Origin: Ascidiella aspersa
Lineage: Eukaryota
Direction: 5' to 3'
Assembly (NCBI GenBank): GCA_963924565.1
Contig: OZ004610.1
Coordinates: 31,620,001 to 31,684,000 of the forward strand
Length of the DNA: 64,000 nt
A program made the position numbers and the translations under genes. This document shows positions 2,460 through 58,300 of this stretch, one piece after another (position 1 is the stretch's first letter; every line of letters starts with the position of its first letter). The notes under the pieces are model-generated. The model was not told the DNA's origin, made no database searches, and saw only the letters and a program-made list of their open reading frames with translations.

Positions 2460-2680
2460 AGATAATTGCTAAGGCAAAAAGGTTGAGTAAATAGGCATCA
2501 TTTTGATTAGGACGTTTCGATACGAACTTGTATCATCTTCACTCTTCAGTTAATGTGACAGAGAAGTCTCAAAAACTTAAGATGGTACAAGCTCGTATAG
2601 AAGATGTCGATTTACTCGAAATTTTCGGCTTTGCAAATCATTTTCAAGCTACATTACAGATCCGTGCATAGTGACCCAAG
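2460..2680. mobile_element. Family A palindromic hammerhead-bearing repeat (other copies ~20030-20155, 37740-37785, 40262-40580, 45255-45385, 51300-51400)
   Basis: Shared sequence gatacaagttcgtatcgaaacgtcttaatcaagatgatgtcgatctactcgacctttttggctttgcaattcattatcaagctacattacag, in both orientations. Confidence 0.8.
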
Positions 2681-5600
2681 ATATTTCTAGTTTTCTAATT
2701 CAATGAATTTGAGCAAAATGGCGTTAATCCTAGTTCTAATCTAACTCGAATTTTACCAAAAATGCTCCCCAACGGCATTTATTTATATCTTCTTCGTTTA
2801 TTGGCTTCAAGCTTTTAATTTTTTACTACAACGTCGAATCATTAATTAGCGGGCTTCTCTTGGCATTGTTGGTGTGTGACAAACAGCGCCGAAGCGGCAA
2901 TTTTTTTAATTTAGATTTTGAGCGTTACAGAGCCCATCCCATCACACTCACGTGAACGTGGCGGTTGGAATTCGGTTTGCTGAAGTTGTTTACCACGTTC
3001 GGGAAGCCAGGTGCTCCACTCTGCCTCGTTGACCGCTGCTTGATCTGCTTTCTGTTATTCTTAGCTTTGGTCCTGCACTTGTGCGTGGAGCGAACAATGG
3101 CTCCAGTCGGTTACACAAAAACAGCGAAACCCCGTAACCCTTGCGCCAAATACGCTGTGTCAAGGGTGCTCAGGGCTGCGACTTGAACGTCCCTCGCCCG
3201 AGTGCACTTGGCGATAGCGCCCTGCGAGTTTCAGAAGCGCTCACCACGTGTGTACCACTAGAAATACATTTTGTTTTCAATGCGGAAGACAAAATTTCAC
3301 AAGTTTTAAAATGACATGATTTAAAATGATGCAAACTTAAATTGCTTGGGAGTTTATCTTTTTGTGACGTTATACAAGCTTGAGTTTTTATCAAATAATC
3401 GCCTGGAGTGTAGCGTAAGTGTCTGATGTTCACTTGTTTAAAGATTGCTTTTATTTTTCTTAAAAAAGGCTTTGAGGATTTGAAACGACCGCCAAGTACT
3501 TGTATAAACTCTCGGTCACTGGGACCGTGCTATTTTCTGAGGGTAAACTTCGAAGCAAAAAGAGAGGCCCCTGCGCTATTCACCGGGGTTACAGGGCGCC
3601 GTTATTTTATGAGAGGAAACTTTAAATAAAAAGGCGCCTAAACTTGGTGTACACTGCGCGATAGCACTAGTCGTGTGTTTAACGCATTTCAAACAAATTT
3701 CGTCGATTTTTTGTTCTTTGTTACAAACGATCACCATAAACTTGTGACAAACATATAAACGAGTATGTCTTTCAGGAAATCCATAAGCACTGACAGCAGT
3801 TAGCGGGGTTATGGGTCTCTCTATTTTCTGAGGGGGAACTTCGAGGCAAAAAGAGGGGCCCCTGCGTGTTTTACCGGGGTTGTTGGACACCTCTATGTTT
3901 TCTAAAGGGGAACTTCGAAGCAAAAAGAGGGGCGCCGAAACTTGGCCCTGCCAGCGGACACGCGCCATTAGCGATTGAAGTCGCCAGTAGGGCCCGGTTG
4001 CGCTGGTCAGTATAGTTTCTCGTGTTTGCCACCTTAGTTTGCGGCGTGCGCGATTTCCCCTCAACGCTTGACCTGTGGCGCCTTACGCCTCGCTGTTTAT
4101 TTAGAGCGCTGGATTTTTTAATGCCCCATGTCGCTGCTGGGTGGTGGTGATGTGGAGGGGCGCGCTCTTTAACTAACTGTTTCCTGTCGTCGGCCTACTT
4201 TTTCGGCGCGGCGCGAAACGCTTTTAGAGAGGCCTTGAACGTTTTTTTTGTCCTCTGTGCCTTGTTTCAACAGCTCCTTTTTTCAGCTTTGTTTATTCGG
4301 AACAAAGTTTGGTCATGGATTTCGTTGCTTCGACGATTTATGCTTGCTGTTTTTCGTGGCGCTTAAGCCGAAGCAAGTCTTAGCTAATGACTTAACTGGG
4401 AACTTATTGCTTGAATTGTGATTTTGATGGCTTCTTCGCTGTTCAAAGCGATATTAATATAGCAATTTAAACGTGACAAAACTGGGAATTAGAAATTTAA
4501 ACGTTTTTACACTATATTACTACTATATATTACGGCAAGTTCAACTGTGGCCCAGCGTTACACTTAACAAAGCGGCTTCGAATTCATAAGCGCCCACAAC
4601 TTTGGCACCGATTCTTGGGGGTCATGAGGGTTTTTCGCTCGCAGCCGCCATTGTGATGGCGTGGCCTAATCGCGTTTGCCAGTTGCCAGTCAAGCCGCTG
4701 GAACATTGACTGACCGCGCTAATTCGATCGCCGCCGTCGCTTGCCCTCCCGCCGACGTTTACCGGCGCGGAATTTGCGACGTCGCGACTGGCGCTGCGCT
4801 GCGTCCAGAAGGTGCTCTCCCATGGCGCCGGCTTCTCCTATGTCTCCCCTTGCTTAATGTCGTGAAAGCCCGGCTTCCCAAGGGCTGTGCCGTTTACGAC
4901 TCATCAGCTTAGCGGTTTGGACGCTAATTATGCGTCCCTTGTCCTCTAATTATGCGTCCCTTGTCCCCCTCACACGCTGTTGCGGCTCTTCCGAATGCCT
5001 ACGCACGTGTTTTTCACTTTGTGCCGACGCGCGCCTTTTCGTATCTCGAGGGACCGCCCGTCAGTGCCTTTCCTGACAGGCCAACGCGTGCGACCTGCTT
5101 TTTTCCGCACTACATTGTGCCCTCAAAGAGTTCGAGGAACCTGGACGTACAACAATGTCCAGGCAAGTTAGGAAATCTATTCAAGCACTGATATTATTTT
5201 GCTGTTGAATGGCAATCTTCGCGGATACAGTAACACGACGCCATAATGCTTGGAAGCTGTTCATTTAAGATGCAGCATCGGTCTAAGGTTTGCTATTCAA
5301 CAACCATATGCAGGCAAGTTTGAAAGCCGATCCTAACACTTGTATTATTTTCCTGTTGAATAGCAACCTTTGCCGAAACAGTAACACGACGCCATAACGC
5401 TTGAAGCGGTCAATTTAAGACGCAGCACAGATGACCGATCGCTACCCCAGCGCGAAATCTTATCTTGCCTTCCCTGTTTGTTCGTGGAAATTTCCGCGCC
5501 GAGCGTGCCCCACATTGAGCTCAGTTTGGAAATTAGGTCAGGTCACTGCTTAGCCGTGGCGTAGCCGTGTATTTCGTGTAAAATGTCCCCAACCGCAAAA

Positions 5601-16510: not shown

Positions 16511-19500
16511 TAAACCTGCCATGTTATGAAAACTTTAATATTAAACTCAAATTCTCGGTTTAAACGTTGAAACAATAGCCTGTCGCTGGTGTAGTGGTGC
16601 ATTGTGATTTGGGAACTGGCTTAGCCGACGACAAGTGTTACTGTTGGTGCTACGACTGGCACAGAGAGCACCTCCCTCTCATGCGGTCTCGTGTTTACGG
16701 TGGCCTTCCGTTCCCGGCGCCCGCGGGTTCACCGGGGTGCGTTCTTGGCCACTACGCACTAGTAAAGCGGCAGCGACGGCGGCATTTGGCCGTTCACTGA
16801 AAACAAACACACAAAGGGTCCCGGGCGCGACCGGCGCACTCGAAAAGTGTGTCATTCGCGTACTAGACCATCGGTTTCCCCAACTAGACAGAGCGGTCGT
16901 CGCCGCCAAAGATAAACCCCGCTAATGCGTGTACCCAAATCATGCGGCGGCGGCGGCGGCTTCGTTGTTTAAGCGACCTTACGTCATACATTAGTGACCT
17001 GGATTCGTATAGGTGTGCCGCGATTCCGATCATTACGCCGGCTTTTCTTAAACGCCGCCATAAAGGGATAAACGCTTGCGTGTCTGTAAAGCGTAACCTT
17101 GCACCGACCCGAGAACCGAACCACAGACCGCTGATAGCAAGTAAAAAAAAATATTTTCGAAATCTTGTGGATAGCTGAAGCACACTCAAGAACTGTGTGA
17201 AAATTTCAGCTGAATAATAATAATCAATGCCGATCTAGATTCGAGCAATGTGGAAATTATAGCATGAAATCTGGACAATTCCCCGAATTGGCTGCCGTGC
17301 CTTGCAGCCGCGTACCTTGAAGTTAAATGTAACCTAGCTTGTAAATAAGTAGCCGAGCGATTCTGCGCGCTCGTGGGTGGGTCAGTAAACTTTTGAACCT
17401 TGGACTTGCGCTGGTGATTCACAAGCTAGTGAAAACAACCGAAGGTCCAGTTTCTTTGAAGTAAATATATTTCTCCGCAAAAATAGACATCATCAGTGTC
17501 AAGAAAAAACTTTTTTTTGGCAAAATATATTTTTATTTTAAATGACTAGAACTTATTAATGACTGACTTTGATCAAGACCGGAAAGTCTAAAGAATATGT
17601 GCTATAAAACCACCATGTTTTTTTGTATTCTATGCACAGCCGAAGACTAAAAATAAACTGCCCAGCCAAATGTCCAGTTTTCTTATAAACAAACCTAGCC
17701 GCACCGCTACTGACAAAATTGGGCCGAACTAATGCTGTCCGCCAAATGCAGCCTTGAAATGGACACGCGTTTTTAATGGGAGTTCAACACGCCCGCGTTT
17801 TAATATTTCCCATCATCTGCCAACGGTCGTTTGCCGCTTGGGAAAGCGAGCCATCTGGAAATAATGGCGCCGAAGTGCCATGTTCGCCTTGTTCGGTCAA
17901 CGTTCGGTCAACAACAACATATTTCGCCGATTTATGATTCATAGCGCCGGAAATTTCGCAATGACGTATCTATTCCACTTGACGTGGTTTCGAGGCGGCG
18001 CTTTGAATGCCGGGCCGGGGGAAAACATGGCGTTTTACGAGAAAGCTCTTTGTGCTTAGCTGCTCTGTTGTCCAACTCCAAAGGGCGAAGGCAGTTGGTC
18101 AGTTTTGAGCGAATCGCGGACGAACGTGTAATTTTTCTCATGACCACATTCGTGCCGCGGCGTTTTTGTGTGTTGGAAAGGAAAGGGCTCAATTGATCGA
18201 GCGTTGTTTACCTTGAATTGCCGAATGCTGTAGTTATCAGTGTAAACAAGTCGTTTTAAAAAGACGAAAGTCACAGTAAAGTCATTTGTAAAAAAATTAG
18301 GTCCCAGTCAAGTCAAAACAATAAGTCAAATTGTAAGTCAAGCTCTTGTCATAAAAATTGAGCGTTAAACTATTAAAATTGTTAAACTAGTCCGATTATG
18401 AGCAGTGGGTTCTTAAATTTTATGATGAGAAATGCCTAATTAAAGCACTTCATTTTAACCCAAGTCTTTGTCCAAAAGATATAAGTCAACTCAATTCATT
18501 TTTGTCCCAAAGGCTTAAATCGAGTCAAGTCATTGAGTTCGGTACAACATTGGTAGTTATGCATGGATATAAGACTGATTAGACGCTTTAACGTAATTAT
18601 CAGCAACTCTTCAGGTGCATTGGACACAGCAAGACCAGATGCCTTCGCAAGCCTAACGGCACGAAGTGAAATGTCTCCTCTGTGCAAATAGCAAGTGGGA
18701 GGAACAGTAGCAAACTCGGCCGGCATCTGAATTATTAATTGTCGCAATTTCTTACTTTGTCCGAGCGTCTCAAAGTCCTGGGCCTAGGTCCGAGTTAACG
18801 TAGTTTAGTCTGGAGAACAAGAACGCCACCGTCTTATTTCGACTAGCGTTATATTCTCGCCGCAAACGCAACGGCCTTCGTTTTTTTGCCCGTCTTCCCA
18901 TTAGACCTGTCCAGCGTTGGGCGCGCTTTCGATTCGGTTAGCATCGATTATGTGACAAGACCGCGGCCGCCAGTTTGAATGTCATGTCCTTTTCTGCCTA
19001 TCCGGTCGCATCTGATGGCACGCCGCCCCTTTGGCACGCGCGCATTTTAATTCCTCTGACTATAGGCTTTTTGCGTTGAAAGCGAGTTTTATTTGAGAGG
19101 TCCGCTTCGAAATCGGCCGCGGTTCGCGACCTTTCGAAGGAGAATGAAATGTAAAGTGCATTGCTAGAATCGTTAATGTTTAACCGACCCTACGGTTTCG
19201 TGGCACCGAGATATCTAAACCTTGACCGAAACGCTCATTCGAAAACCGCGTTTGTTTAACACAGTTGCAAAGCATTTCGAGGGTTTCCATTTCACATCAC
19301 CAAGTTACGACTTAAAGCTTAAACCCGAACGGTAATTAGATTTTAGTTAAAACGAAAAAAAAATAAGTTCTTTAGATTAATTTGTTTGGAAAAGACTTTT
19401 CCTATTGCCTTTGCGGCAAATTTTTCTCGCAAGGAATTTATTTATTTGATTCACACCAGTTTTTATCAAAAATGTCAACACTACGGTTACACACGCCATT

Positions 19501-20030
19501 TTCTCAATACTTTGTTGCGTGCCTGTGGGTACTAGTCACACCTTTATACCTGTCAAATCGTCAGCTGTCATGTTTAGCCAAGTCCCCCTTTGCCATTGTT
19601 AATGGAAAATAGCGTGGGTAAACCCACCGACTCGGTACACACGGGCGATGTTTAATCATTAATATTGAACTACCTGCACTTTGATTTTGGGATTTTGTTG
19701 CTCTGTGCGAGATCGAAACCAAATGGCCACTTTATTGCGTTATCCTCCGCTTTATCGCCATCCAGCGATAGGGAATCTAGCGCGTGGATTCCGCTAGATG
19801 TCGCCATACACTCGTATAAGGCCAAATATACATCTTATGCTCTTCCGTGAGTTTGAACGTGTCACCCAAAATTTTCCCTTTTATTGACCGCTTTTTTTAG
19901 TAGTTCCTTTTTCATTTCTCACACTTAATACATTACCAATAAGAAAAAAGTGTTTATTCGATTAAATATCTTTTAAACATAGAAATATATATTTTACTTG
20001 AAACATTTCATGTTAGGTTAAAACTGTCAC

Positions 20031-20072
20031 ATTAACTGAAGATGATACAAGTTCGTATCGAAACGTCTTAAT
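20031..20072 (+). ncRNA. Minimal type I hammerhead ribozyme motif, family A (intact core)
   Basis: ATTAA-CTGAAGA-T-GATAC(aagttc)GTATC-GAAA-CG-TC|TTAAT: stem I, stem II, palindromic ACGT stem III, GUC cleavage triplet. Confidence 0.85.
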
Positions 20073-23000: not shown

Positions 23001-23106
23001 AAATAACGTTCAAAGTAAAGGAAAATGTTTTTCGTGATTATTTTGTCATAACTTAAAAACTCGTCATTTTATAAATGTCAAATGCATTTCGTCTGCAAAG
23101 AATTAC

Positions 23107-43300: not shown

Positions 43301-46300
43301 TAATTTTATCAACGTCAATAAAAATGATAATTTTTAAGTGTACTTAAATGGTATTAAAATCGAATTAAACGTGCGCTGTGTTTAGAATCTCATTTTAAGT
43401 TAAGGAATCACGCGAGTTAGACAAAAGACACACGCATTTTGTCCATTAAAATGGTAATTCACATAATTCAATAAAACGAAAATCGATGCAACATAAAATA
43501 TTTCCTGTCCTGCTGTAGGCACTTTTCCCTTCCCAACACGCTAAAGTGCACGTTATAACCGCAAATGTTGATGCATTAACCCTTTTAAGAATCCTAGCCG
43601 TTTTCTTGTAGCATTAGCAGTTGTATCCGCTTTTTGTGTTGTAAGGATGCCTCTCTGGCGTGAACAAATTGCCCAATTCACAAGTGCGGTGCGATTTGCA
43701 TTTAAGTTGTACGACGTCGCGTCGCTTTGAAATAAATCGCTCTTGTTTCCTTAAATCCGGTTCGCAATGGGCAGCAAAAGAATGTAATGTCGATTAATTG
43801 GAATAAGCCATTAGTTAGGATATGTCGTTCTGTGGAGCGCATACACGGCCTATACAAAAGAATTCCGCCGTGGCGTTTGGATATGCGCTAAACTGCGGAC
43901 GGTTGAAATTTCTCGTGATAAACGAACGACATCGTATCAACTTGCGAAATGATTGCGCAAAAAATTTTAAAATTGCTGCTGCTGCTGCTGCACTTTTTTT
44001 GACCCAAGTCGAAAACAAAATGCGAACCATGTTGGCGTCGGGTTCGCCCGCCAGTCACGACACTCTGTTTTTATTGGGTGGACTGTTGACCCATGTGATT
44101 GTGAGGTTTACAGTTGGTGTTGGCGGTTCGGAGCCCAGCAAGTCATCGTTCCTTTTGTTATTTTTTTTTAAAACGAATGCGTTGGTTGTAGGACTGTATA
44201 TTATTCGCCCCTGTTTGACAGTATTTGTTTGGCTGGAAATTTTTTTCTGCTTACAGTTGGTTTACAGTTGGTGTTTGCGGTTCGAAACCCCCAAGTCATC
44301 GTTGTTTTTTTGAAAGAATAAGAATGCGTTGCTATATTTGTTTTGCCCTGTTTGACAGTATTTGTTTGGCCGGCTATTTTTTGCTGCTATCTGAGATTAG
44401 CTTGGGTTTATTAAGTCGCCTTGTTCACGGCGTTTTGTTTTTTACGCAGGGACAACTCGTACTATCCGGGATACGGACAAACCTACCAACTACCTCCACA
44501 CCTCGCTCAATATGCAATGTACAAAGGTCAAATGCAGAGGTAAGTTAAAAAAAGACTTGCTATTAGTTCTCGCTCTTTTAATTTCGCTCCATAGTTTTTG
44601 CCTGGAGTTATTTTCAACGAGATACAGTTTTATTGCTTAAGCTTGCCGAGATATACTTTGAACTCTTTAGGATTCTATTGCTTGCTGCATATTATTAAGG
44701 TGCTTGATTAAAGTGTACGATTAAAAAAAACATAAATCAAGAAATATTTAATAAAAAAAAACGTTTGCGAAATAATGAGAATGCCCATAAACAAGTATAT
44801 CTCCATTTTTTTGTACTTTCAAGTTTTTAGGCTTATTAGGTATTACGAAATAATTTCAGTTATCTGCTATAACTATAACATAAGTAGGCGCTGTTGCGGC
44901 TAAATTTTTCCGCAAATTGTCCTCCCCCCCTATAACGGTCGCGTTTCCCCTATAAGTCCCGCTATGGAAGGCGTGCAATGCGTTGCATCCGCCCCTGCCG
45001 AAGCCGCGCATCTAGGATACTTTACCTTTTCCGCCGCCTAAACGCGCTTTTAATCAACTGCTGCCAAATTCAAATAGAGATAGATGGCCCCTGGCTGTTA
45101 ATTTTTAAATTTGTTCGTTTTGTACGTACCGATAATTTTTAGTGTACTAATTTGGTTCACTGGCACGGGTGCGTGGGTTCATTGCAGTGTTTTATATATT
45201 ATTAAGTTAGCGTTCCAATACTTTATAGAAAATTGAAAAAAAAGATTCATTCATCAAATTAAACTGAAGATAATACAAGCTCGTATCAAAACGTCTTAAT
45301 CAAGATGATGTCGATCTATTCGACCTTTTTGGCTTTGCAATTCATTTTATCAAGTTAAATTACAGAACTGTGCATAGTGTACCCATATATAATCTTGATT
45401 TAATAAAATAGGTAAAGCTACAAAAAATACTTCTTCATTTTTAACAAAACGTTACAGCCTTTCCAAAATTATGCATTTTGTACCCAGGAGATATAGAGCT
45501 TATTTAAAGATCATTGTCTTTGCCTAAAAATGCTAAAAACATTTCGCTCTTGAAAGAACAAGCTTGTAACCCATGTTTACTAAGGTTTCAATTAAATTTA
45601 CATAAGAAAGAACATAGACTTCTAACTGACCCTATAGTCCAGCATAACCCACTTAACCGTCCAACTTTTATCAAATAGAGATCGCTCGATCGGCCCTTAC
45701 TCCGAACTGACCAGCGCCAGTTTAGTAGCCCAGCTCGTTCAGGCCGAAGACACAGCGAATCTCGCCTCAATCAATTCACAGCTCGCATCCAAGGAAGGAC
45801 CCGTTTATAAGGTGAGATCATCGGCCTTGGGTTGAATTGTTTTAATTATTATAGAGAACCAGGTGTGAATGCGAGTGTGAATTGGGTCTGAATATCTAAA
45901 TTCATCCCCTGCTTGAAACGTAGTTTTTTTTTGTCTGTTGTGACAATTAGAAATTTTTGGATTTTTTTCTGTTTTTTAAGGTATAAAAATCGTTAAAGTG
46001 TTAAATTGTCATTCCGGCATAATTCTGTTATATAAAGTACCAACGTTTTCGCAATATATTGCCTACAAAAGATTGCCCGAATAGACGGTCGAAACGTTGG
46101 TATATAATTTAATAAAATTTTGCCGGAAGAATAATTTTACAATTGCAACAATGCCTGGCAGCAACAGTATATTCATTCTATAAATCGCTGTTGCGAATGA
46201 TTTACAACCAAGCTTTTCCCCATACAGGGCGAACTGTTCGGTTTTCTATGCAAAGTCGCCGATGAGATGCTTTTCCGTCAAATCGTCTGGATCAAGAAGT

Positions 46301-49300
46301 TGCCATTCTTCGACAGCATTTCAATCAAAGGTAAGCCCCCCCCCCCCTCCAAACAAACACACACTTACACAATCTCATCTACAATTCTACACACTCACAC
46401 TTACACTTACATACACACACTCAAACACACGCACCCTAACTCTCACACACACTTACACAATCACATATACAATTCTACACACACACACTTACACAATCAC
46501 ATCTACAATTCTACACACACACACTTACACAATCACATCTACAATTCTACACACACACACTTACACAATCACATCTACAATTCTACACACACACACTAAC
46601 ACTTGCACAAATACTTAAACTTAAACTCACACTTACATCTACACACTCATACTCGCACTCACACATAATCACACTCACGCTCAAAATTACACTCAAAATC
46701 ACCATCACACTCATACTAACACTCATACACACTTATACAAGTACTCACACTTACATCTACACTTACACACACACTCACCACTCAAACTCACACTCACACT
46801 CACAATCAAAACACACACTTACCACTAACACTCAAAACACACACTTACCACTCACACTCAAAACACACACTTACCACTCACACTCAAAACACACACAATA
46901 GCTCTTTAATTTATTCATTTGTTCGCTTGTATACGTTTGCGTTTACTTCAAGTTGTAGCAGTAGCGGCGTTAATTGCACGATTCGGGAAAATGTCGAATT
47001 CCAATTGCTTCCTGATCGACGAAGAACTTGAACCTGTACTTGGGCGAAAGTGAAAGCTATTTTTCCCCTTGTTGACGCTGCTATAGGAGCCAATTGGCTT
47101 TACAGCGATGCTTTGCTGGGAAGTTGTACTGTTAACAACCCGAATAGTGTCGACGATTGACGCTTTTCAGTCGACCGATTTGGGAAACAAAATATCAAGC
47201 TGTTTGTGGAATTGACCGAAATATTGGAACGGCGCATTTTAAAAATCTTTGTAAACACAAGCTTTTAAACCTACAAAACAGTATAGACTTTCTTGTCTCA
47301 GTCAAAATCAGTCACTATAGGTTCTAGTTTAGAAAAGAGAAATATATTTCGTCAATCACGGCATCATCAGTCTCTTATTGAAATAGAACTTTCAAACCTA
47401 TAGCTAAAATGTCGAAACAACGAAATGCAATCTTTGTCGAAATTTAAAGATTCTCAATAGATTTAAAGCGGCTGCACACTATAAAAACGGGCTTGCTGTT
47501 GTTATGTTAAAGTCTTGAACTTTTTTTCCCGCGACCCTCTAACAAATTAAGTTTCTCCCTAAGGGGTACATGGACCACAGTTTAAGAACCCCTTTGGCAA
47601 ACAGTTAAAAAAACAATGGCAATCTTGTGTAATCTATACAAGTATACGTTTTTCAGATCACACCACTCTGCTGAGCACAACGTGGGCCGAGATAATCCTC
47701 CTGGCCGCTCTTTGCGTCCATGAGGAACAACTCTTCGGAGATCTTGCCGACATCACGGCCAAGTACATTCCGGACAGCGAGGAACTATCGAGGTGAGCAC
47801 AAATTCTTTTTCGCCGCTGTTTAAAGCCAAACTTTTTACGATTACCAAAGGTGGCATTCGCGTGGTAAAATTGTAAAATTGTTCTTCCAGCAAAATTTTA
47901 TTATAAAATTGTTATGTCGGCAAAATTTCTTTAAAGTACCAACGTTTCGACCACCTATTCGCAATTATATTGCCCTGAAGAAGATTGCCAGAATAGGTGA
48001 TAAAAAAAATATAATTGAAATAAAAAAAATAAAAAAAATAAAATTGAAATAAAAAAAATAAAAAAAATTATAATTGAAACAATGCCTGCAACAGTATTCA
48101 TTGCGTGATAAAGTTCTATGGTATTTTGCGGAGTGTCGATCGTCCCGTTGTTTTTTAAGAGAAATAGGTTCTTCGCCATTTAATTAGGGTTGGTGATAGA
48201 CTTGTGTGGCGCAGAGAACGGTTTCTATCTATGAAACATTTAAGCTATTACATTTAAGGAGCATAATGGTTGTAGTAAGACGTAATAAGAATATCAAAGC
48301 CCATACAAACATAGGTATCACTTATATATATACAGTAATAATCAGTGCCTTCTCACTATGTTAAAACGAATGCAGATTTATTCGAAACGTTCAAATTGCT
48401 ACTTACTTCTGTATGGGCTTTGATATTCTTATATAAATTAAATTTCGTTGAAAAGTGCGCGAGGTTGTAGTACGTTGCTATTTTGTCACGGCACGCTTTG
48501 TAGAAAAAAGATATATCCAAAATATCGTGCAAGGCCATCTCTGCCTGTAGTTTATTTTACCGTAATCTCCAAATGCCATATCATATTAGCAATACACCTG
48601 ATTAAAAATAACCGCTTTGACGTGATTGGAGGTCCCGTGACCGGAAACCGTTTCTGTGACGTATCACACCGGTCGTGACGTAACTGTTTGTGACACGGGC
48701 GCTTTGAGACGGCCTTAGCGTTAGCACGCGCACCAAGATCACATAAGGCAGTGACCTCTGTAGGTTGAAGGTCGGCAAAGGCTCAAACCCGAGTCACCCG
48801 CGCTTGAAATCAAGTGTCAGGCGTTTGCCCTTCTGATTTGGCGAATGTGTACAATTGCCTGTTTAATCGTCACTGACCAGACGCGTATACCACAACACAC
48901 TGCTGCTGGCAGTTGACGCTATAAAGTTCAACCGTCGGTCAGCTGCCATTAAGTTATATATTTGTCGCCAATACTCGATGATTGTCGTTTTGGTTGCGTG
49001 TTAAACCCTCTTTGAGCACATTTTATTGCAAATTGAAGCTACGCAGGTGATCTGAAAAATAACCGAATATCTTGAATTGATTTTGAATGTAAGTTTAAGC
49101 TCAAATCTAACGTAGGTGGAATTGCACTTTGACGTAAAAATATCAAAGCACCCTTTGATACTGGAAAGCATATGGAAATTTTTGTGATAGATTCTAAGTA
49201 TTTCTAATAATTCTTTATTTGTTTTGCAACATATTGTCGAAAGCGTTTAACGAAATTAGAAACGGACGTATTATTTTTTTAGCAATCAATTTATCTCGCT

Positions 49301-52300
49301 TCAAAGTTACCAAATACACAACGGTTAACCAGGGTTGCGAAATCCACTATACAAACGTGACGAGCGCAGGGAAAACTAAATTGATGTATAAAACAGTTAT
49401 ACAACCACCTCTTAGTCCTACTTTTGCAAAGATGGGTCGCTTCCAATGCGCTAAGGCAGTGTTTTTCAACCCTTTTCCCCGGCGAACTGAATGCTAAGCG
49501 GCCTAATCAATTTAAACGGCGGGCCAATTAAAAAACTACACTGCGCTAAGGTGACCCTGACTCTAAAAAATGGCGAAAGCGGCGTGCAAAGAGTGGATTG
49601 CGCAACTTACAAAGACTCGGCGCTTTAAGGAAGTAGCGAAGCGTGGAGGTGGCGCACAAAGCTCATCCCATCTCGTGAGCTTCCTGGCCGCGCTGTTATT
49701 GATCCACCGTTGTCGTCGCTGTCTCTAAAGCCGAGTATACGGGCTCCTGGAAAAAGCACAATGACGCATCCCGCGCATGATGCTCTACACTCTTCTCCGC
49801 CTCTTTTAGCCGGTCTCTTGCTGTGTGTTGACAGGAAAGTCAAAAATTCCCGCTTTCGCAATACCGTGGTGCCTGTTGTTGTTGATAAAGCCCCGGGGTT
49901 AACTGAACTGACGGGAACCCGTGGCCTTTCTCCTCGGGGAAAACCGCCCTTTCGTCATAAACAGAGTAATCTTCGAGTTTATGAACAGTCGAAACTGACG
50001 TTTTAATTAGGATTGTGCGTCTCGTAAAACTTTCAAGAAAACCAAAAGAGTTAAAGATCCTAAACTTTTGTAAGCGTGCGTTGCCTTTATCGCAACGTTA
50101 TAATGATTTTTGCAACTAGCTTTGAAATTCAAGCAGCGACAGTTAACAAAAAGTCAAATGCGTTTTCATCCACATTTAAACGCCCGTTTTTTAATAAATA
50201 TGAACAAAATCTACTGCATTTCGCAACGAAACGCTTTACACTTCACGCGGCAGTTAAAAAAACGCTTTTAGGCTAATGTGCACTTGCCAGACTCTCCTAA
50301 CCTTCTAATGTCATTGCTGCGGTCGCCCGAAACCGATTTATCATTTGCAAGGCCCTTAAAACTGGCGCTCGGGTATTCTATATTCTATTCGCGCGTGAGT
50401 AATACATAGATCAAGTCAAAAGCGGCGAACGGTCCTTCCGCGTTCAAGGCGGAAGTCCCTATTAAAAGGCGACGATAGAATGGCTGGCGAGCGCCGCAGT
50501 AAACGGAGAAGCGCTGGCGCATTACCATCAAGGCTTCCCCCGTCCCCTTACACGTTATCCATCTTGCTGGCCAACCAACGCCGGCCTTCGTTAACGCTTG
50601 TACGGCGTCGGTGACACGGTCGCGGTAACACGCCAAGGCATAATGCATCACGCCGGCCCGTTTTCTTTTTGCAACTTGCGATGCATTGACACCTTCCGAT
50701 CCGCGGCCCTTAATGGATTTTCGCCCATACACCACTCAATATACTAAAACTGGCTCCGGGAATGGATATAGAGAGCAGAAGCGGCTCTTAGGCTTTTCCT
50801 TCGGCGTTGCCCGTCCTTCCTTATCGCAACTTCCCACTTCTATTTAAGCACCCACTTCGTGCACATCCATCAGCCACGCGCTGATTTAATTTTAACCACC
50901 GCGCGTTTTTTAGCCACCAGTTCATCCATCTTCCCCGGCAAGACACGGCGCTGGTAACCGAACGTGCGGTGGTCGGTCATATGCGTTGGTGAAAACCTAA
51001 AGGCCTCTGCCCATAATTGTAATCGAAAGGCTGCTACCAAAGTAATTATCACGTCGAAAGCGGTGCGACAAATAAACGAAAAGTGGTTGAAAAATGGAGT
51101 GGCGTGGGTTGCACAAAAAATTGCACAGGAGAAGTACAGAGCTAGGGTAGTAACCTCAACAAAATTCTGTATGGGCTTTTTCTACACTTACACCTTGAGT
51201 CCAGCATTTGTGTTTAATAAACTCATTTTGTTCTGCTTTACTCTGACGGTTGAGTTTTCAGAACTCATTTAAAAATGTTCGGTACTGATCAAAAATTTTT
51301 TGGCTTGATTATGATTTGCAAAGCCAAAAAGGTCGAGTAGATCGACAGCTGCTGTAAAAATTGATTATCAAGTTACATTACACATCCGTTCATAATGTAC
51401 CTAAATCATTTTTTTAACTTTTCCATTTTTTAAATCGTTCTGCCTCTCCTTCATTCAGGTTCACCGACTACGAAATGGAGATTCTGGAGCGAATGACCTT
51501 CCTCTACCAAAAGTTCTCGCATCTTCGAATCGACAAGGAAGAATACGTGATCATGAAGGTCATCAACTTCCTCAATCAAGGTCAGTGAGCTCAGAAGTTT
51601 TTTTTTTTAATTTTAGAAAGATATAACATTTGTTAGTACTTATATTTGTAAATGGCCGTATTCGTCTAATTCTAAGTAGGGTAACCATTAGAAACTGACC
51701 TGATGAAGCACGGTTGTGCAAAAGCTTGTCAAGATTTTGATACCATCTGTCTTTATGTAGTGTACCATTTTACCCTATCTTTATATATCTTAAAAGGCCG
51801 CACTTGTCTATCCTAAGTTGGTTAATAAGATGGCACGATATAAAGGCAATTGTATTAAATTCCCGACAAACTTTCGCAGAACCGTGCTTCATCAGGTCAA
51901 GGATTCTTGCTTGTTTACCAATTTTTCTAAATTGCCGTATTTTGTCTAATTCTAAACAGGGTAATGGGGTGGCACTGTATAAAGACAAATTGTATTGAAA
52001 TCTTATTAGTACTTTTACCCGATGTCTTAGATCAATGTAAACTTTACCAACAGCAGTTCAAGTACTATATGTGAACGCGGCAGTACTAATTGTACTTATG
52101 AAGATTAATCTTTCTAAGACGCATATGGGTTTAGTATATGCGGGTCTGAGGCACCTGTTTTGCTCGTCACCTGATATTTGCACTTTTGATAAACATCAGC
52201 CATGGCTGCCTGACTCATTTCGCACACCGCTAACCAGTCACACCGGGCACGTCAACGGAAGGTAGCTAAGGAAAATAACAAAACTTCCAGATGACTTATT

Positions 52301-55300
52301 TCCTATACCGTTCCGGTCGTCCAATACACACACACAAACTTACGCACTTGCGCACGCGATACACACACCGCTTTGTTGTTTTTGCACCTTGGTTTTCTGT
52401 TTTCGGGCGAAAACTTCCGCGAGATTGGAAAAAGCAGTTTTCCGTTAAAACCAACGAAGCAACAAACTGCTGTAAAACGACTAACATTCGTAGATTCGGA
52501 AAGTTGCAGGTTCCTAGCGTTAAAAACTTGCATGACCATATAGTTAGTCGATTGTATGATCCCACCTTAAAACATGAATCACGTTTATCGCGCATACCCT
52601 AACCAGTGTTTCTTAACCTTTTATGGCCTACGGCACCCCTTAAAAGTTGTAAATAGTTTTTCAATACCCCGACTGGAATTTTCGTAGAGTATTTTACTGA
52701 AATGCCACTATAAATGGAACTAGAACGACACAATTAACTTAAAACATGCAGGAACATGTCATTTGATATAATGGCCTCTAATCGTACACAAATAGTTGTA
52801 TCAAGAAGCTTACCAATTCAGCAAATATCAGATTCCTAATTTTTTTTTTAAATCCCCATCGGCATCCTTGAGCATTAGAAACGGCACCGCGGTTGAGAAC
52901 CACTGCTCTAAACGGTTTACTAACCTTTTGTACAGTTTTAAAGCTCGTTTTTGGCCACGGCCAGTACCCATACCCCTTCCTATTTTTAAGGCCATTTTTC
53001 AATCTATACCCGCGTTTTGCGTCAACCGTCACCGAAAGCGCCATACGATGGTCGCGGAATTTTTCGCCACTCTAATGTACAACTGGTCGCCAATTCCCAG
53101 AAAATAAGGCCCTTCATCGGAGTATGTGTTTACGAAATGACGCAATGCTTCGAAGCATAATGGTTGGAATTGTAGTAAGAATATCAAAGCCCATATAGAA
53201 GTTGGTAGCATTTTGAACGTTTCTAATAATTCTATTAATTTTCAACTTCAGATGTACTACTTCTGTATGGGCTTTGATGTTCTTACTACGTCCTACTCTG
53301 TATTTTAGAAGTGATTGGACGTGTGTGCGAAATTACCAGTTTTAAAAAATGTTTTGTGATTTTAAATTTTACCCGACTTATTAATCCACCACTTACACGG
53401 CCGACAGGTATTTTTCTACTCGAAATAGTCGCCCGATAAACGTGCACAAAAGCCAATCAATCGCTGGTCTTCTGCCATTTCGCGCAAATACGAGCGAAAT
53501 GAAATACGCCAGGACCTTGTCTCGGCGGGCACATAACGAGGCACGCTCTGCAATTCCTAATCAGGGCACGACCACGACTTTCAAGCTCCATTTAAGAAAC
53601 GGCGACGGCTCGAAATCGTTGGCACTGTGTTAGGTTTGACGAGCTAGACGTCTAGCCGCATGCAAGTGCTCAAATACCGACGGCCATTAAGGCGTTGCGA
53701 TCAAGTTGGCTTAACCCCTGTTGTACGGCAATTTCTGACCTGACGTGCGATACGAACGCCAACTTTTGAAAAGTCGTACTGCGCTCGTGTTCTGAGTCGC
53801 CTGGGCACTTTTGCGTTGTCATGTCGGACTGATTTCGTGATGATCATAGTCACGTCCACACAATATAACAATTTTATCGCGTCTCGCTGGGAAATGCTTG
53901 TCTGCGACCTATTAAAGGTCTGGGTCAATCAATTAAAGATACACACGCATATATGTGTTAAACAACTGTGATGTAGCCCTTCTGAAGTTGCTTTTTGACC
54001 AATGATTAAGGCTTTCGTATCAATAGTACACTGAAAGCCATCGCAGAATCACTGAATCTGTCGATCTTGCTTGCATCATTGATTGACAGATTCGGTGAGT
54101 CTGCGATGACTTTCGGTGTACTAATAATGATACGTAAGCCGTAAAAAAACAGCTTCAGAAGGGCTCGATCACAGTTGTTAAAAACATATGCGTGTGTATC
54201 TTTAATTGATTGACCCAGACAAATAACGGGTCGCAGACATGGCGCGATGGACGGCTATTTACTAGATTGTGTGGACGTGACTGTGATCTGCACGAAATTA
54301 GTCCGGTGTACTCGTCTGGGTCAACTATATTTCTCCCCAACCGACCCAATTAGAATCAGCACATTTAAAGCTGCTTTTGCCTTTAGGGATCGAATCTCAA
54401 TCAGTCGCCAAATCTAAAAACCAAGCTCCGACGTTTTAAATTCCGTGCTCAGCTATCGTGGCGAATTGTAATTGCGGAAAGGTCGAAAGGACATCAATAT
54501 AGTATTATGTTTATAAACCCTTGGCAAACGGCAAGACGGGTGGCAAACGGCGGTTCCAAGAGCAAACTGCAGTTTATTGCGAATCGTTCGTGCCGATCAT
54601 AACTGGCCTTTCGTGTCAACAAGCACGCTACCAACAAAAAACAGAACAATAGGAGTGACGTCACATCATTTCTGCGAAGTTCTACCAAACGTGTCTCGGC
54701 GTCCGAGTCGGCCAAAATGTCAGCAAAATAAGCCGTAGTAGGTTGCAAGTTCACTTGAAAAATTCGGCCAAATTGTCATAGCCTATACTCCATGACGCAC
54801 GGGTCTTGTCCAACCTTTAATTACGTCTATCGCTTACGGTTTAATTTTGCTTGGAATTATCAACGCCATATGCCTTTTGTTTGCCGACCAACGTTACTAT
54901 TACGTCACGCCTTTGCGCCACTTGAATTAACCGCAAGGAGGCGCTATTACGTGAAGCGGTAAAGCAAATAATCATGCCCAAGTCCGTATTGCCTTTGTCA
55001 ATAATGCAAAACCCAATATAATTTGGAGCAAAATGGTTGGAGTTTGTAGTAAGACGTATAGTAAGAATATCAAAGCCCATACAGAAACAGGTAGCATTTT
55101 GAACGTTTCGAATAACTCTTTATTTATTTTCAACACCCAATATACTTATTATACCCAACATACTTTATAGTTATGTTTAAGTTGTTGCAACCCCGGAAAA
55201 ACACCAAGACTGGACCGCGCGGGGTTTTCAATCTTTCCCACAGAAAATAAACACCATTTGTTCGCATCCAACTTTAGCTTGCGCGCCCCAAGCGCGTTAT

Positions 55301-58300
55301 AAGTGAAGCTACCCGCAAGTGACCGTTATAGAACGCACTACACACTAGGACGCCAGTCACGTTTTTTCACTTTAAAGATAGCGGGCCAGCGTTGGCAGGA
55401 GTTACCCGGAAATCTGCCTCTGCGCTTTATAGCAGCGGTAATTGCAAAGGCCGACCATGATGGCATCGTTGCCCTGTATAACTGTTCTGTGCCGCACTTT
55501 TTCGAGAAACGCAAACCAGAATAGACGGTCGGGAAATAGAGCCGGGAAACAACGTTGACCACACCATGCCATCCAACTTTTTGAACTCTGGCGAGGTTAA
55601 ACGCTAGCTAAACGTGGCCGTTAGTTTTCTAGGCCAGTTGCGGACACATTAAGGCCCATGCCAATATTAAATAAGACGATATATCAAAAGCTTTTTTCGT
55701 CATTTTATTTATCAATAAAAAAAACATATATCAAAATGCACGTTAAATAAGGACGATATATCAGAATTGTCGTTTTTTCCTGCGAGCGAGATTTAGGCGT
55801 AAAATATACAAATCAAATAGACAATGAAAATCCAGCAACAGTGTTTATCGTCGGCAGGAGTTTTTAAATCCCCATATTCTCAAAGCCGCCAAATTCATTA
55901 CCGACTGGCCAAAGTACTCTGCTATCTCGCGTCATCCAAAAGCCTACCATTGCGCAATTATTCAGTAATTAGAATTTCGGAATTCCCAGTGACGCTAAAG
56001 ACATTTCCAGTGACCGTCATAAAAACGCCTGTATTTCATACGAGGAAGTTTAGAAACGAAACCCGCCCGAACCCATCAAACAAATGATCTCAAATGGTCT
56101 TTTGCCGACAGACCCCGTTTGGCCTTGGGCACTTCAATGCGTCAGCGTGACATAGCGATAAATTTGGCCGCGCGAATAGGCTTAGAGCCAGCACCTTCGC
56201 GGCCCCAAAGCTCTATAGATGACAATTTTTTTGTGTTTTTTTTTGAAGAATGTCTAAAAAGTGTGCCAAGCAAATAATGACGTCATTTATTCGTGACTTT
56301 AAAAAAAATATACAACAACTCTAATAGCTAACACGCAGTATGCATCATTGTTAAATATAAAAGTACATAATGGTGTAATAAATCCTAATTTAGTAACCCT
56401 GATGCGGTCAGCTGGTATCTGCTGCCGAAACGTCGGTTTATACTTCGTTTACACCAGAATAGCAATTTCTATCTATTGGTATAAAGTCCATTTTACATTA
56501 TAACAAAATGCATAGAAACCTTTTTTTATTTTTAACAATAAGATTTCAGAACACTATATACGGATCTGTTCATAAGTTCAATGGTGAAAATAACGCCCCA
56601 AATAGACGTTAAAAGCGACATGCTTTATTTTCAAACGTTTCGGCAATTTCGGATATCACTGATGATGGCATTAGAAATTGCCGAAACGTTTGAAAATAAA
56701 GCATGTCGCTTTTAACCTCTATTTGGGGCGTTATTTTTAACAATAAGATTTCAGCCAGTGAATTTGTAGTTTCGCAGCGTTTTATTTAGCAACGAAGCCA
56801 TACTGGTGTAAAAATCTTTTTTTGTAAATGCCGTATTTGTCTAATTCTAAATAGAGGAATCAGGTGGCACTGTATAAAGACAAATTACAGTGCCACCTGA
56901 TCCTCTATGGTGTAAAAAGGGCAAACATAGCGTTTCCCCGGGTCGAACCCGCTTAACACCCGCGCATTAGTCACAAAACGCGTCGTTCCGTTAATGGAAT
57001 CTAAGCAAGTTCATAGTAAGGCTAACGCGCCATCTAAACTCTTCAACCCGTACTTCGTGGCTCTGACGTCATAGCCACTCAAAAGTGGCTCTGCCCTGAT
57101 TTTAACTCGAAATGCCCCTTCGAAAATTTTCTGTTTGTTTTCGACGTTGCATGGCCCTTTATTCTATCGCGAAGTGCACCCGTTTGTTTTGGCCGGTCAA
57201 TGCTATCACCCCTACTATACTACATACTGCCAGCATCTTTCCGCGAAAACGACTTTATTTAAAGAGTGCCAAATGGGTTGCGCAAAACTCGAATTTCGTT
57301 TTCCTGTCGTATTGTGTTCCATTTACCACGGCCTGTTATTGTGTTCTATTTACCACTGCCTGTTGATCGGGTCAACTTGCCCTGTGTAAAGTGAATTCCG
57401 GGTAAAATTTAACAGCTTCCTCCTATCTTATCAATGGCCAAGTTAATCTATAGAAAGAGCCGCTTGAATCTCTTTGTTTCATTTTGCGAATTGACGATAT
57501 TCTTCACAGAAACGATTTGCTAAAAATGTTACGCATCTATTTTTTCTTTTCCCTTTTCTTTTCCCGAGGCGATTAGTTTGAGAAACACGGCCGATAAGTT
57601 TTACTTTGCGAATTTGCATCACATTTTTGGCCGGGCATGAAGTTTGTAGACTCACTTTAGTAACAAACTCCGTAATCAATGTAAGAGTGCTAGTAGCAGT
57701 GTTTTTTTAAGGTGTTTTCTCCAGCGGTTTCCCAAATTTTGGACTTGCAACTTTTTGGTATTTAAATGAAACACTTGCGGTCTCTTAAAACTACTTAGCG
57801 GTCACCCAAACCAAACCTTAAAGAAACCCTGGCTAGAAGTTTAAATATTAATCATACAACCCTTACCTAATGGTACGTTGATGTAAAACCACAGCAAAGG
57901 TACCAACTGTAACTGTGCCTAAAGGTTTTAACTTAAAGAGTTCAAGATCTAACAAGTTGATGTCTTAGCCTTTTGGTAAATTACGGATACTTTCAAAGTA
58001 TCCGGCATCGCCTTCTATGGTTACATCTAAATATCCTTATTTGGGCAATAAGGGGTTCGCGGAACGCACTTTTGGTAAAGGCTCAATACTTTCAAAGTAT
58101 TAGGCATCACACTATGGGTACATTACCTCACTACTCATACTCATATTTTGGGCAATAAGGGAGGTTGGCCAATTGCAGTTTTTGTAAACCCTTTTTGTAA
58201 AGGTCTTAATACTTTCAAAGTATTAGGATCACATTCTACAGTTACATTACCTCAATACCCTTATTTGTGCAATGAGGGGTTCGCAAACGCAGTTTTGTGA

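What the first reader, a model, noticed from the sequence alone, without database searches (positions are those of the whole stretch)
2460..56754. Multi-family swarm of short palindromic elements built around minimal hammerhead ribozymes
Seen: at least five sequence-unrelated short repeat families share one architecture: stem I - CTGANGA - one extra nt - stem II hairpin - GAAA - CG or GC - TH - stem I complement (20031, 36938, 40491, 45264, 47975, 51696, 51863, 56395, 56656). Stem I and II sequences differ between families but keep pairing, which amounts to covariation. Established: Penelope-like retroelements carry minimal type I hammerheads with a palindromic, near-absent stem III that are thought to act as dimers, and their copies often appear as inverted truncated pLTRs. 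Inference: these are non-autonomous ribozyme retroelements (PLE-derived or retrozyme-like) that standard annotation would call MITEs, and they are unusually dense around one developmental gene.
Basis: partly seen in the sequence, partly recalled or inferred. Interest (0 to 1): 0.85.

Follow-up and report, generated by a model that had tools for sequence, protein, structure and literature searches.

The report
Penelope-element minimal hammerhead ribozyme fragments
The short, often palindromic repeats in this window are the broken-off 3' ends of Penelope-like retrotransposons, each carrying the minimal hammerhead ribozyme motif already described for these elements in 2014, so the finding is real but ordinary.

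Summary
The motif is real.

Only 2 of the 9 cited sites are fully intact (20036, 56659). Another (51895, minus strand) is nearly intact, five have one or more core-disabling substitutions, and 47975 is a half motif. Genome copies and RNA reads show that the family consensus is intact.

A genome-wide count gives 3,154 CG-type and 644 GC-type motifs, against 3 each for the reversed control pattern.

Families A, B and C, a B-like type (H1) and an E-type copy lie 80-260 nt downstream of ORF ends carrying GIY-YIG (family B also RT YVDD). The copies show 5' truncation, head-to-head inverted partners and, in A, a ~32-nt tail. These are the hallmarks of Penelope-like elements. All of it matches Cervera & de la Pena 2014.

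They are not MITEs and not tandem retrozymes. High density around the nuclear-receptor gene is not special: the elements occur genome-wide, and other windows of this scan noted them too. RNA-seq shows transcription but no cleavage ends.

This is a known kind with new members. Interest is low.

The parts
20026..20156 (+). Family A copy, 131 nt, with a fully intact min-HHR at 20031-20072. The core is 20036-20067 and the predicted cleavage is after C20067. The 3' end is the family's sharp end ...GTGTACCCAA.
2464..2679 (.). Family A head-to-head pair: minus arm 2464-2559, plus arm 2566-2679. Both hammerheads are decayed: an insertion in the core at 2511-2549 (-), and CTTAAGA plus a deletion in the plus arm.
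40378..40582 (.). Family A head-to-head pair. The minus arm 40378-40487 reaches the tailed 3' end but lacks the 5' half of the HHR. The plus arm 40487-40582 ends without the tail and has core CUGUAGA (A6>U) at 40491-40522.
45254..45385 (+). Family A copy. The HHR at 45264-45295 is inactivated (G10.1>A, G12>A).
51303..51404 (.). Two family A 3'-end fragments without an HHR: 51303-51349 (-) and 51359-51404 (+). RNA reads from other copies run on from 51347 through an uncut HHR.
36925..37054 (+). Family B copy, 5'-truncated just before the HHR. The HHR is at 36941-36976 with G12>A. The 3' end is the family's sharp end ...AACAGTTTATATA.
47935..48001 (.). B-type foldback remnant. The 3' half of the HHR is on the minus strand (47939-47960). 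The 5' half is on the plus strand (47975-48001) and runs into an A-rich tract.
51696..51762 (+). Family C copy. The HHR is at 51700-51727 with G12>A; reads from other copies show G at this position.
51796..51900 (-). Family C copy. The HHR core at 51895-51868 is intact. Helix III is AGUU (family AGCU) and stem II has lost one pair.
56390..56482 (+). Family D copy. The HHR is at 56399-56434 with A9>C. The family form is CUGAUGAGG..., with no extra nt and a bulged U in stem II.
56587..56746 (.). Family E foldback. The inverted truncated arm is 56587-56650 (-). The direct copy is 56653-56746 (+), with an intact HHR at 56659-56690 and predicted cleavage after U56690.
47299..47383 (-). The HHR is at 47370-47341 with an intact core, a 6-bp stem I (AAGAGA/UCUCUU), helix III AUAUAU and one stem II mismatch.
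21626..21661 (-).
17464..17496 (-). G-like core (CUGAUGA U ... GAAA UAUA UU) with poor stems: a decayed relic.
36685..36888 (.). Family F foldback: 36685-36725 (-) and 36798-36888 (+). It carries the U3-A8 form UUGAAAA U GAAUAA-AGAG-UUAUUC GAAA CG UU at 36800-36831 (+) and 36723-36692 (-).
55024..55155 (-). Family F copy with the U3-A8 motif at 55133-55102. It has the highest RNA read depth of the laid stretch.
56818..56886 (-). Family C 3'-part fragment without an HHR, 96% identical to the family.

Best explanation
These repeats are 3'-terminal pieces (the pseudo-LTR region) of several lineages of endonuclease-positive Penelope-like retrotransposons (PLEs).

Layout of each lineage: ORF end (RT, then GIY-YIG), then 80-260 nt of UTR, then a minimal type I hammerhead, then 45-95 nt, then a fixed 3' end.

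How the copies arise:
- New copies are made by target-primed reverse transcription that starts at a fixed internal site near the 3' end. This gives the sharp 3' ends, and a second start site about 32 nt away gives the 'tail'.
- Synthesis usually aborts early, which gives the variable 5' ends.
- Priming on both DNA strands yields a second, inverted, truncated copy head-to-head with the first. This is what makes the elements look like palindromic MITEs.

The hammerhead has almost no helix III. Its palindromic ACGU, AGCU or AUAUAU can pair only with a second sense copy, so any self-cleavage needs a dimer (tandem pLTRs or pairing in trans), and perhaps the element's own protein.

Shown here: the motif and its family-level conservation, the stem covariation, the link to RT/GIY-YIG ORFs, the insertion anatomy, and transcription.

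Inferred from the literature: the TPRT mechanism, dimeric or protein-assisted cleavage, and its role in processing PLE transcripts.

Most window copies are dead relics with core mutations.
For: 1. Motif conservation.
- The consensus of A, B and C from 30 genome copies each keeps CUGANGA, the extra nt, G10.1-C11.1, GAAA, a palindromic dinucleotide and U-H.

2. Genome census.
- CG type 3,154 against 3 for the control; GC type 644 against 3.
- Four non-palindromic dinucleotides together give 298 against 50, mostly one-step derivatives of the CG/GC families.

3. Stem II covariation among B-type families.
- Examples: GGCGGCUU/AGGUUGCC, GGCUUGCC/AGUAAGCC, GACGUUCU/AGCACGUC, GAUUACCU/AGGUUAUC, GAUUGCCC/AGGUGGUC.
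- There are many G-U pairs, which would be C-A mismatches on the other strand.

4. ORF linkage.
- B: the L070 ORF has YVDD plus CxxC-(V)YIGET...H...H. Homologues score E 1e-60 to 1e-25, and P0020 passes both the RVT_1 and GIY-YIG cut-offs.
- C: L058:986-1243 scores GIY-YIG 25.6 bits (cut-off 22.6), about 260 nt upstream of the HHR.
- A: an endonuclease C-terminal peptide is open in both L022 and L025 and matches the B endonuclease at E=7e-6.
- H1 type and E type are linked by coordinates.
- At least 921 endonuclease candidates fall into about 7 identity tiers.

5. Insertion anatomy.
- Sharp 3' ends with 5' ends spread over 120-600 nt.
- Inverted partner with a variable inner junction.
- In A the direct arm ends at q132 and the inverted arm at q96-113.
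- Close pairs are almost always (-,+).

6. Literature. The same features are described for PLE min-HHRs and PLE insertions (PMC4209133; PMC8557442; PMC11167929).

7. Transcription. RNA reads cover the elements and run on into other flanks.
Against: - No Rfam hammerhead hit, even at E<=10. This is expected for a motif without helix III, but it means no curated model backs the call.
- No pile-up of RNA read ends at any predicted cleavage site, so cleavage in vivo is not shown. Depth was only 10-90 reads, and the library was not designed to catch such ends.
- Families D and G were not linked to any ORF.
- The E link rests on one coordinate pair, and the A link on a short 34%-identity peptide match.
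- Stem I is only 3 bp in B and E.
- A and C copies pile up with their 5' ends just upstream of the HHR. Simple random truncation does not explain that.
Confidence: 0.85

Rival explanations
1. The very short forms are a dedicated non-autonomous, SINE-like class rather than random truncation products. These are the roughly 90-130 nt forms D, E and G, and the short A and C copies. Each would be a self-contained module running from a transcription start just 5' of the hammerhead to the reverse-transcription entry site. It would be transcribed on its own and mobilised in trans by PLE proteins.
For: - 15/30 A copies and about 20/29 C copies start within a few nt of the HHR's stem I, while their upstream flanks are unrelated.
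- D and E hits all start at the same point, with 94-96% identity and at least 720 and at least 815 candidates respectively.
- No ORF was found next to D or G.
- Penelope is reported to have its TSS in the pLTR with an internal promoter (PMC8557442).
- Non-autonomous PLE derivatives are described in the literature (PMC8557442; bioRxiv 10.64898/2026.07.22.740005).
Against: - The uniform 5' start of D and E may only reflect the truncation of the window copy used as the query.
- A, B, C and an E-type copy all continue into PLE ORF ends in some copies, so they are not separate families.
- No TSS data are available.
Confidence: 0.3
2. The hammerhead-like motif is kept for a reason other than self-cleavage. 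It could be a binding or folding platform for the PLE protein near the reverse-transcription entry site, or a hitch-hiker. The elements are still PLE fragments.
For: - No read ends at the predicted cleavage sites.
- In the published PLE system, catalytic HHR mutants do not affect insertion in vitro, cleavage needs the protein, and no RNA-seq ends were seen at the site (PMC11167929).
- min-HHRs cleave poorly in vitro (PMC4209133).
- Naiad PLEs thrive without HHRs (PMC8557442).
Against: - All catalytic-core positions, G10.1-C11.1 and the palindromic helix III are conserved across lineages whose stems have diverged completely. A mere hairpin platform would not need that.
- The C3-G8 to U3-A8 pair change in F keeps a known catalytic-core pair.
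Confidence: 0.3
3. They are metazoan retrozymes. These are tandem direct repeats bounded by type I hammerheads, which are cut out, circularised and copied back.
For: - Type I topology and a palindromic mini helix III are shared with retrozyme HHRs (PMC4209133).
- A 2026 preprint derives vertebrate retrozymes from PLE pLTRs.
Against: - No tandem direct arrays of these units occur in the window.
- Close pairs genome-wide are divergent (-,+), not direct.
- Copies have a fixed 3' end and truncated 5' ends rather than boundaries at cleavage sites. No excess of 5' ends falls at the cleavage site in A.
Confidence: 0.05
4. They are MITEs of a DNA transposon, and their hairpins resemble a hammerhead by chance.
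For: - Foldback appearance, with arms up to 96% complementary.
- Sub-threshold miRNA-hairpin matches in Rfam.
Against: - The inverted arm is optional. Most E and half of the A copies are single-armed, and the inner junction varies.
- Ends are asymmetric, with a tail on one arm only.
- The copies continue into RT/GIY-YIG ORFs.
- The motif is enriched about 1000-fold over the control.
- G-U pairs make the structure strand-specific.
Confidence: 0.02

Closest known systems
Minimal hammerhead ribozymes (min-HHR) of metazoan Penelope-like elements (Cervera & de la Pena 2014, PMC4209133)
   Same: - Core boxes, an unpaired nt between A9 and G10.1, a conserved G10.1-C11.1 pair, and palindromic 15.2-16.2 with no real helix III.
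- Helix I of 3-6 bp and a long helix II (up to 8 bp).
- Several consensus families per genome with compensatory changes, and thousands of copies.
- Mostly single motifs from truncated PLEs, opposite-strand pairs close together, and a U3-A8 core variant.
   Different: Nothing of substance. Family D lacks the extra nt and has a bulged U in helix II, similar to the bulge reported for the D. virilis variant. The families here are specific to this genome.
Canonical endonuclease-positive Penelope-like elements (Penelope/Poseidon, Neptune, Nematis; PMC8557442, PMC11167929)
   Same: - A single ORF with RT followed by a C-terminal GIY-YIG with the CCHH pattern.
- Strong 5' truncation, an inverted 5'-truncated copy abutting the 5' end, and a 30-40 nt tail on one end.
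- The HHR lies upstream of a fixed internal reverse-transcription start. The insertion ends 45-95 nt after the HHR here, against roughly 85-92 nt in the Anolis element.
   Different: - No complete pLTR-ORF-pLTR unit was inspected here.
- The clade of each lineage was not determined.
- In the Anolis element the ORF starts inside the HHR; here that is untested.
Metazoan non-LTR retrozymes (Cervera & de la Pena 2020, PMC7229834; bioRxiv 10.64898/2026.07.22.740005)
   Same: Type I hammerhead with a tiny palindromic helix III. Probable descent from PLE pLTRs.
   Different: Retrozymes are tandem direct repeats that yield circular RNAs and carry canonical helices with loop-loop contacts. These elements are dispersed, 5'-truncated and head-to-head.
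Rfam Hammerhead_1 (RF00163) and related hammerhead models
   Same: Same catalytic core and type I topology.
   Different: No match at E<=10. The models expect a real helix III.

Membership tests
PLE-type minimal hammerhead (min-HHR) | Core boxes CUGANGA ... GAAA ... U16.1-H17 in type I order | tested here: met
   Present in the consensus of A, B, C, E and G and in 3,798 exact genome matches, against 6 for the controls. Only 2-3 of the window copies are intact.
PLE-type minimal hammerhead (min-HHR) | Helices I and II paired, with compensatory changes between families | tested here: met
   Per-family pair tables are, and B-type stem II variants are. Stem I is short (3 bp) in B and E. No formal covariation statistic was computed, because MAFFT misaligned the families.
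PLE-type minimal hammerhead (min-HHR) | One unpaired nt between A9 and G10.1, and a conserved G10.1-C11.1 pair | tested here: met
   The extra nt is U or A in A, B, C, E, G, H and F. G-C is the first stem II pair in all 9 representatives. D has no extra nt but a bulged U.
PLE-type minimal hammerhead (min-HHR) | Helix III reduced to A15.1-U16.1 around a palindromic insert | tested here: met
   CG 3,154 and GC 644. GG, GT, TG and TT together give 298, mostly single-step mutants. G has UAUA.
PLE-type minimal hammerhead (min-HHR) | Located in the pLTR / 3' UTR of a Penelope-like element | tested here: met
   Met for B, C and A from loci, and for H1 and E-type by coordinates. Not shown for D or G.
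PLE-type minimal hammerhead (min-HHR) | Site-specific self-cleavage, as a dimer | tested here: inconclusive
   No excess of read ends at the predicted sites in one RNA-seq run at 10-90x depth.
Penelope-like element (endonuclease-positive) | RT and C-terminal GIY-YIG endonuclease in one ORF | tested here: met
   - L070:1706-2641 (-) has YVDD and the GIY-YIG motif in one frame.
- Its Pfam scores are just under the cut-offs.
- L058 GIY-YIG scores 25.6, above the 22.6 cut-off.
- Homologue P0020 passes both cut-offs.
- All copies inspected are truncated or internally deleted.
Penelope-like element (endonuclease-positive) | Heavy 5' truncation with a fixed 3' end | tested here: met
   B copies extend 120-600 nt upstream of one sharp 3' end. 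A extends from 131 to more than 420 nt.
Penelope-like element (endonuclease-positive) | Inverted 5'-truncated copy adjacent to the 5' end | tested here: met
   Seen in A, B, C and E loci and in window pairs. Close genome pairs are almost always (-,+).
Penelope-like element (endonuclease-positive) | 30-40 nt tail present at one end only | tested here: met
   In family A the direct arms end at q126-135 and the inverted arms at q96-113. The window pair 40378-40582 shows the same. It is not seen in E.
Penelope-like element (endonuclease-positive) | Partial tandem pLTR-ORF-pLTR organisation | not tested
   No full-length copy was among the 90 loci, and no further genome letters could be fetched.
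Rfam hammerhead families | Match to a curated covariance model | tested here: not met
   No hammerhead hit at the gathering score or at E<=10.
Metazoan retrozyme | Tandem direct repeats bounded by hammerheads; circular RNA | tested here: not met
   No tandem arrays of these units, and pairs are divergent. Circular RNA was not tested.
MITE | Fixed terminal inverted repeats on every copy, with target-site duplication | tested here: not met
   The inverted arm is optional and its junction varies. Target-site duplications were not examined.

The most novel reading that the evidence does not exclude
The pile-up of 5' ends a few nt upstream of the hammerhead, together with the fixed 3' end 45-95 nt downstream, may mark a self-contained module of about 90-130 nt. 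That module would hold the start site, the hammerhead and the reverse-transcription entry site. It would be transcribed on its own and copied in trans, making it a SINE-like parasite of Penelope elements in which the hammerhead acts as the protein's handle. Its head-to-head insertions would also create thousands of perfect hairpins inside introns that could feed small-RNA pathways.
Probability: 0.2. Interest if true: 0.5.

Novelty: new member of a known kind. Interest (0 to 1): 0.25.

Why it matters
It matters mainly for annotation. Rfam and standard repeat callers miss these motifs, and the foldbacks mimic MITEs or miRNA hairpins. A genome with more than 5,000 such motifs and about 7 Penelope lineages will therefore be mis-annotated unless a min-HHR descriptor is used.

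Biologically it adds one more animal genome to a pattern known since 2014. It offers natural material for the still open question of what the hammerhead does for Penelope elements: many diverged lineages, a U3-A8 family, and transcribed copies. It says nothing special about the nuclear-receptor gene in whose introns the copies sit.

Tried and rejected
- **Rfam.** Scans at the gathering score and at E<=10 gave no hammerhead, only weak miRNA-like hairpin hits on foldbacks.
- **Covariance model.** A MAFFT alignment of family representatives, meant as the basis for a covariance model, misaligned the core boxes because stem II lengths differ. I built no model and used my own descriptor and IUPAC pattern counts instead.
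- **Genome letters.** Families D and E could be studied only through coordinates, matched strings and RNA reads, and I did not try another tool to get more letters. The uniform 5' start of D and E hits is therefore not counted as evidence, since the query itself is truncated there.
- **Thermodynamic folding.** Folds of monomers and dimers reproduce stem II everywhere and stem I in C, G and D. They say nothing about helix III.
- **RNA-seq.** No cleavage ends were seen.
- **Pfam.** RVT_1 and GIY-YIG on the family B ORFs fall just under the cut-offs. The link was secured through homologues and through L058.
- **Spurious matches.** The first 30 residues of the family A peptide query are the antisense translation of the A hammerhead. 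Matches limited to q1-30 were ignored.
- **Organism.** It was not identified. The best named relatives of the family B protein are anthozoan, plus one 78% match to an ascidian protein.
- **Rejected readings.** MITE and retrozyme readings were rejected; see the rival explanations.

Full report
**1. What is at the cited places**

I read all nine sites plus 2515 and parsed them against the hammerhead numbering. The stated layout is present: stem I, CUGANGA, one extra nt, a stem II hairpin closed by G10.1-C11.1, GAAA, a 2-nt palindrome, U16.1-H17, stem I'. Most window copies, however, carry a disabling change.

| Site | Family | State |
|---|---|---|
| 20036-20067 (+) | A | Fully intact |
| 56659-56690 (+) | E | Fully intact; stem I only 3 bp |
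| 51895-51868 (-) | C | Core intact; helix III palindrome and one stem II pair lost |
| 36941 | B | G12>A |
| 40491 | A | A6>U |
| 45264 | A | G10.1>A and G12>A |
| 51700 | C | G12>A |
| 56399 | D | A9>C |
| 47975 | B-type | 5' half only; the 3' half sits antisense in the inverted arm |

A strict descriptor gives 2 hits in the window and none in 200 dinucleotide shuffles. Rfam sees no hammerhead, even at E<=10.
- family G at 47370-47341 (-);
- a decayed B-like motif (H) at 21661-21626 (-);
- the abundant family F with a U3-A8 core.

**2. The motif belongs to the families, not to chance**

Whole-genome searches (308.6 Mb; the window is C4:31.62-31.68 Mb) give first-look candidate counts that are lower bounds:

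| Family | Candidates |
|---|---|
| A | at least 3,440 |
| B | at least 912 |
| C | at least 863 |
| D | at least 720 |
| E | at least 815 |

Alignments of 30 copies each for A, B and C show an intact motif in the consensus and in about 81 of 89 copies.

Exact pattern counts over the genome, each against the reversed pattern as a control:

| Pattern | Matches | Control |
|---|---|---|
| CUGANGA-N-G...C-GAAA-CG-U-H | 3,154 | 3 |
| Same with GC | 644 | 3 |
| Four non-palindromic dinucleotides together | 298 | 50 |
| U3-A8 form (one family, F) | 1,609 | 21 |

Almost all of the non-palindromic matches are one-step mutants of the CG/GC families.

The strings listed show many stem II sequences that keep pairing through changes on both sides. 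Examples are GGCGGCUU/AGGUUGCC, GGCUUGCC/AGUAAGCC, GACGUUCU/AGCACGUC and GAUUACCU/AGGUUAUC. They contain frequent G-U pairs, which make the helix specific to this strand.

tabulates stems I and II for nine representatives. G10.1-C11.1 is invariant. Stem I is 3-6 bp and its sequence differs between families.

RNA-seq reads from other copies restore A9 at 56405 (32/32) and G12 at 51720 (101/131).

**3. Link to Penelope-like elements (PLEs)**

- **Family B.** Copies share one sharp 3' end and reach 120-600 nt upstream. That upstream part is the end of an ORF with RT motif YVDD, then CxxC-(V)YIGET...H...H, stopping about 100 nt before the hammerhead.
  - Pfam gives GIY-YIG 21.4 bits (cut-off 22.6) and a weak RVT_1.
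  - Database homologues score E 1e-60 to 1e-25 and carry RVT_1 with or without GIY-YIG. One of them, P0020, passes both cut-offs.
- **Family C.** Locus L058 has a GIY-YIG domain above the cut-off, about 260 nt upstream of the hammerhead on the same strand.
- **Family A.** Long copies extend more than 420 nt upstream into a peptide that is open in two independent copies. It aligns to the C-terminal part of the B endonuclease (E=7e-6). Its relatives at 63% identity end open frames of up to 880 aa.
- **By coordinates.**
  - An H1-type motif (C1:8284434-8284469, -) lies 117 nt downstream of an endonuclease match (C1:8284586-8284873, -).
  - An E-type motif (C1:351238, +) lies 260 nt downstream of an ORF end (C1:350978, +).
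- **Lineage count.** The genome has at least 921 endonuclease candidates in about seven identity tiers, which fits one hammerhead family per PLE lineage.
- **Unlinked.** D and G were not linked to an ORF.

**4. Insertion anatomy**

- Many copies have an inverted, 5'-truncated partner abutting their 5' end, with a variable inner junction. This is what makes the window elements palindromic: 2464-2679, 40378-40582, 47935-48001, 56587-56746 and the F foldbacks.
- The partner is optional, so it is not a terminal inverted repeat.
- Close genome pairs are almost always (-,+), which is head-to-head.
- In family A the direct arm ends at query position 126-135 and the inverted arm at 96-113. That is a one-sided tail of about 32 nt.
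- These are the published hallmarks of PLE insertions: strong 5' truncation, an adjacent inverted truncated copy, a 30-40 nt tail and the HHR in the pLTR (PMC8557442).
- The Anolis PLE starts reverse transcription at two internal sites downstream of its hammerhead and extends both DNA strands (PMC11167929). That offers a mechanism for the sharp ends, the tail and the head-to-head pairs.

**5. How it most likely works**

Shown here: these are 3' ends of several PLE lineages, they were inserted with the PLE signature, and they are transcribed.

Inferred:
- Target-primed reverse transcription runs from a fixed internal site, with early abortion and twin priming.
- The hammerhead can form helix III only with a second sense copy (ACGU, AGCU and AUAUAU are self-complementary), so cleavage needs a dimer and possibly the element's protein.

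An inverted pair cannot supply that second sense copy. In a read-through transcript it would instead form a long hairpin.

In one RNA-seq run, reads lie only on the repeats. 98% of them run on into other flanks, and they come in both orientations. No excess of ends falls at the predicted cleavage sites. The Anolis study reports the same negative result. What the motif does for the element therefore stays open.

**6. Comparison with what is known**

- the extra nt between positions 9 and 10.1;
- G10.1-C11.1;
- palindromic 15.2-16.2;
- short helix I and long helix II;
- several covarying families per genome;
- thousands of copies, from cnidarians to vertebrates;
- mostly solitary motifs from truncated PLEs;
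- opposite-strand pairs 100-700 bp apart;
- a U3-A8 variant;
- weak dimer-dependent activity in vitro.

They are not retrozymes, because there are no tandem direct arrays. They are not MITEs either. This is a new set of members of a known kind.

**7. Density claim**

- The window holds 43 family fragments per 64 kb. That compares with 13 per 64 kb in 198 kb of flanks of other copies.
- But it holds only 2 intact CG-type motifs, where the genome mean predicts 0.65. A 61-kb stretch of C1 (351-412 kb) holds 6.
- Earlier notes of this scan report the same elements in introns of unrelated genes on other pieces of this genome.
- I confirmed a nuclear-receptor zf-C4 exon at 39588-39815 (+). I see no reason to tie the elements to that gene.

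**8. Limits**

- The pile-up of 5' ends just upstream of the hammerhead in A and C is unexplained.

Noticed in passing
window 12882-13769, 15846-16102, 20556-20658, 28487-28572, 30539-30632, 36382-36888, 48270-48435, 53173-53297, 55024-55155: Family F is the commonest repeat in the window, with 18 fragments. It has the same layout as the other families but with UUGAAAA in place of CUGANGA (a U3-A8 pair), a perfect 6-bp stem II and GAAACGUU. The genome has 1,609 exact matches against 21 for the control. Stem I is only 2 bp in the window copies. A U3-A8 variant was published for Schistosoma PLEs.
   Followed up: partly
loci of families A and C: Half of the A copies and about two thirds of the C copies begin within a few nt upstream of hammerhead stem I. 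That is a pile-up of 5' ends which random truncation does not explain. There is no matching pile-up at the predicted cleavage site.
   Followed up: partly
window 56626-56698, 15438-15533, 13599-13736, 35680-35803: Sub-threshold Rfam matches to miRNA precursor families (mir-722, MIR7696, MIR5649, MIR2871, MIR2606). All fall on foldbacks of repeat elements, so they are hairpin look-alikes rather than evidence of miRNA genes.
   Followed up: no
window 39588-39815 (+): An exon encoding a nuclear-receptor C4 zinc-finger DNA-binding domain (Pfam zf-C4, 103.5 bits). I verified only the domain.
   Followed up: partly
window 26411-26984, 46302-46896, 29222-29474, 16300-16537: Four tandem-repeat blocks, with periods of about 9/27, 12-36 and 13, 23, and 26 nt. 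They are unrelated to the hammerhead families.
   Followed up: no
window 18232-18319, 38409-38495, 41872-41990, 63810-63923: A further dispersed repeat built of AAGTC-rich units (…AAGTCCAAGTCAAGTC…). It has no hammerhead core.
   Followed up: no
L070:2682-3110 (+) versus L070:1706-2641 (-); L082:439-1251 (-): Two PLE ORF fragments lie head-to-head on opposite strands in one locus, and the minus-strand ORF contains a masked run of N. L080 carries an unrelated LTR-retrotransposon-type ORF.
   Followed up: no
window 51250-57000: In the RNA-seq run no read lies on the unique intron sequence of this stretch. All depth sits on repeats and comes from other loci. Expression of the nuclear-receptor gene itself is therefore not visible in the sampled 6% of that run.
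   Followed up: no
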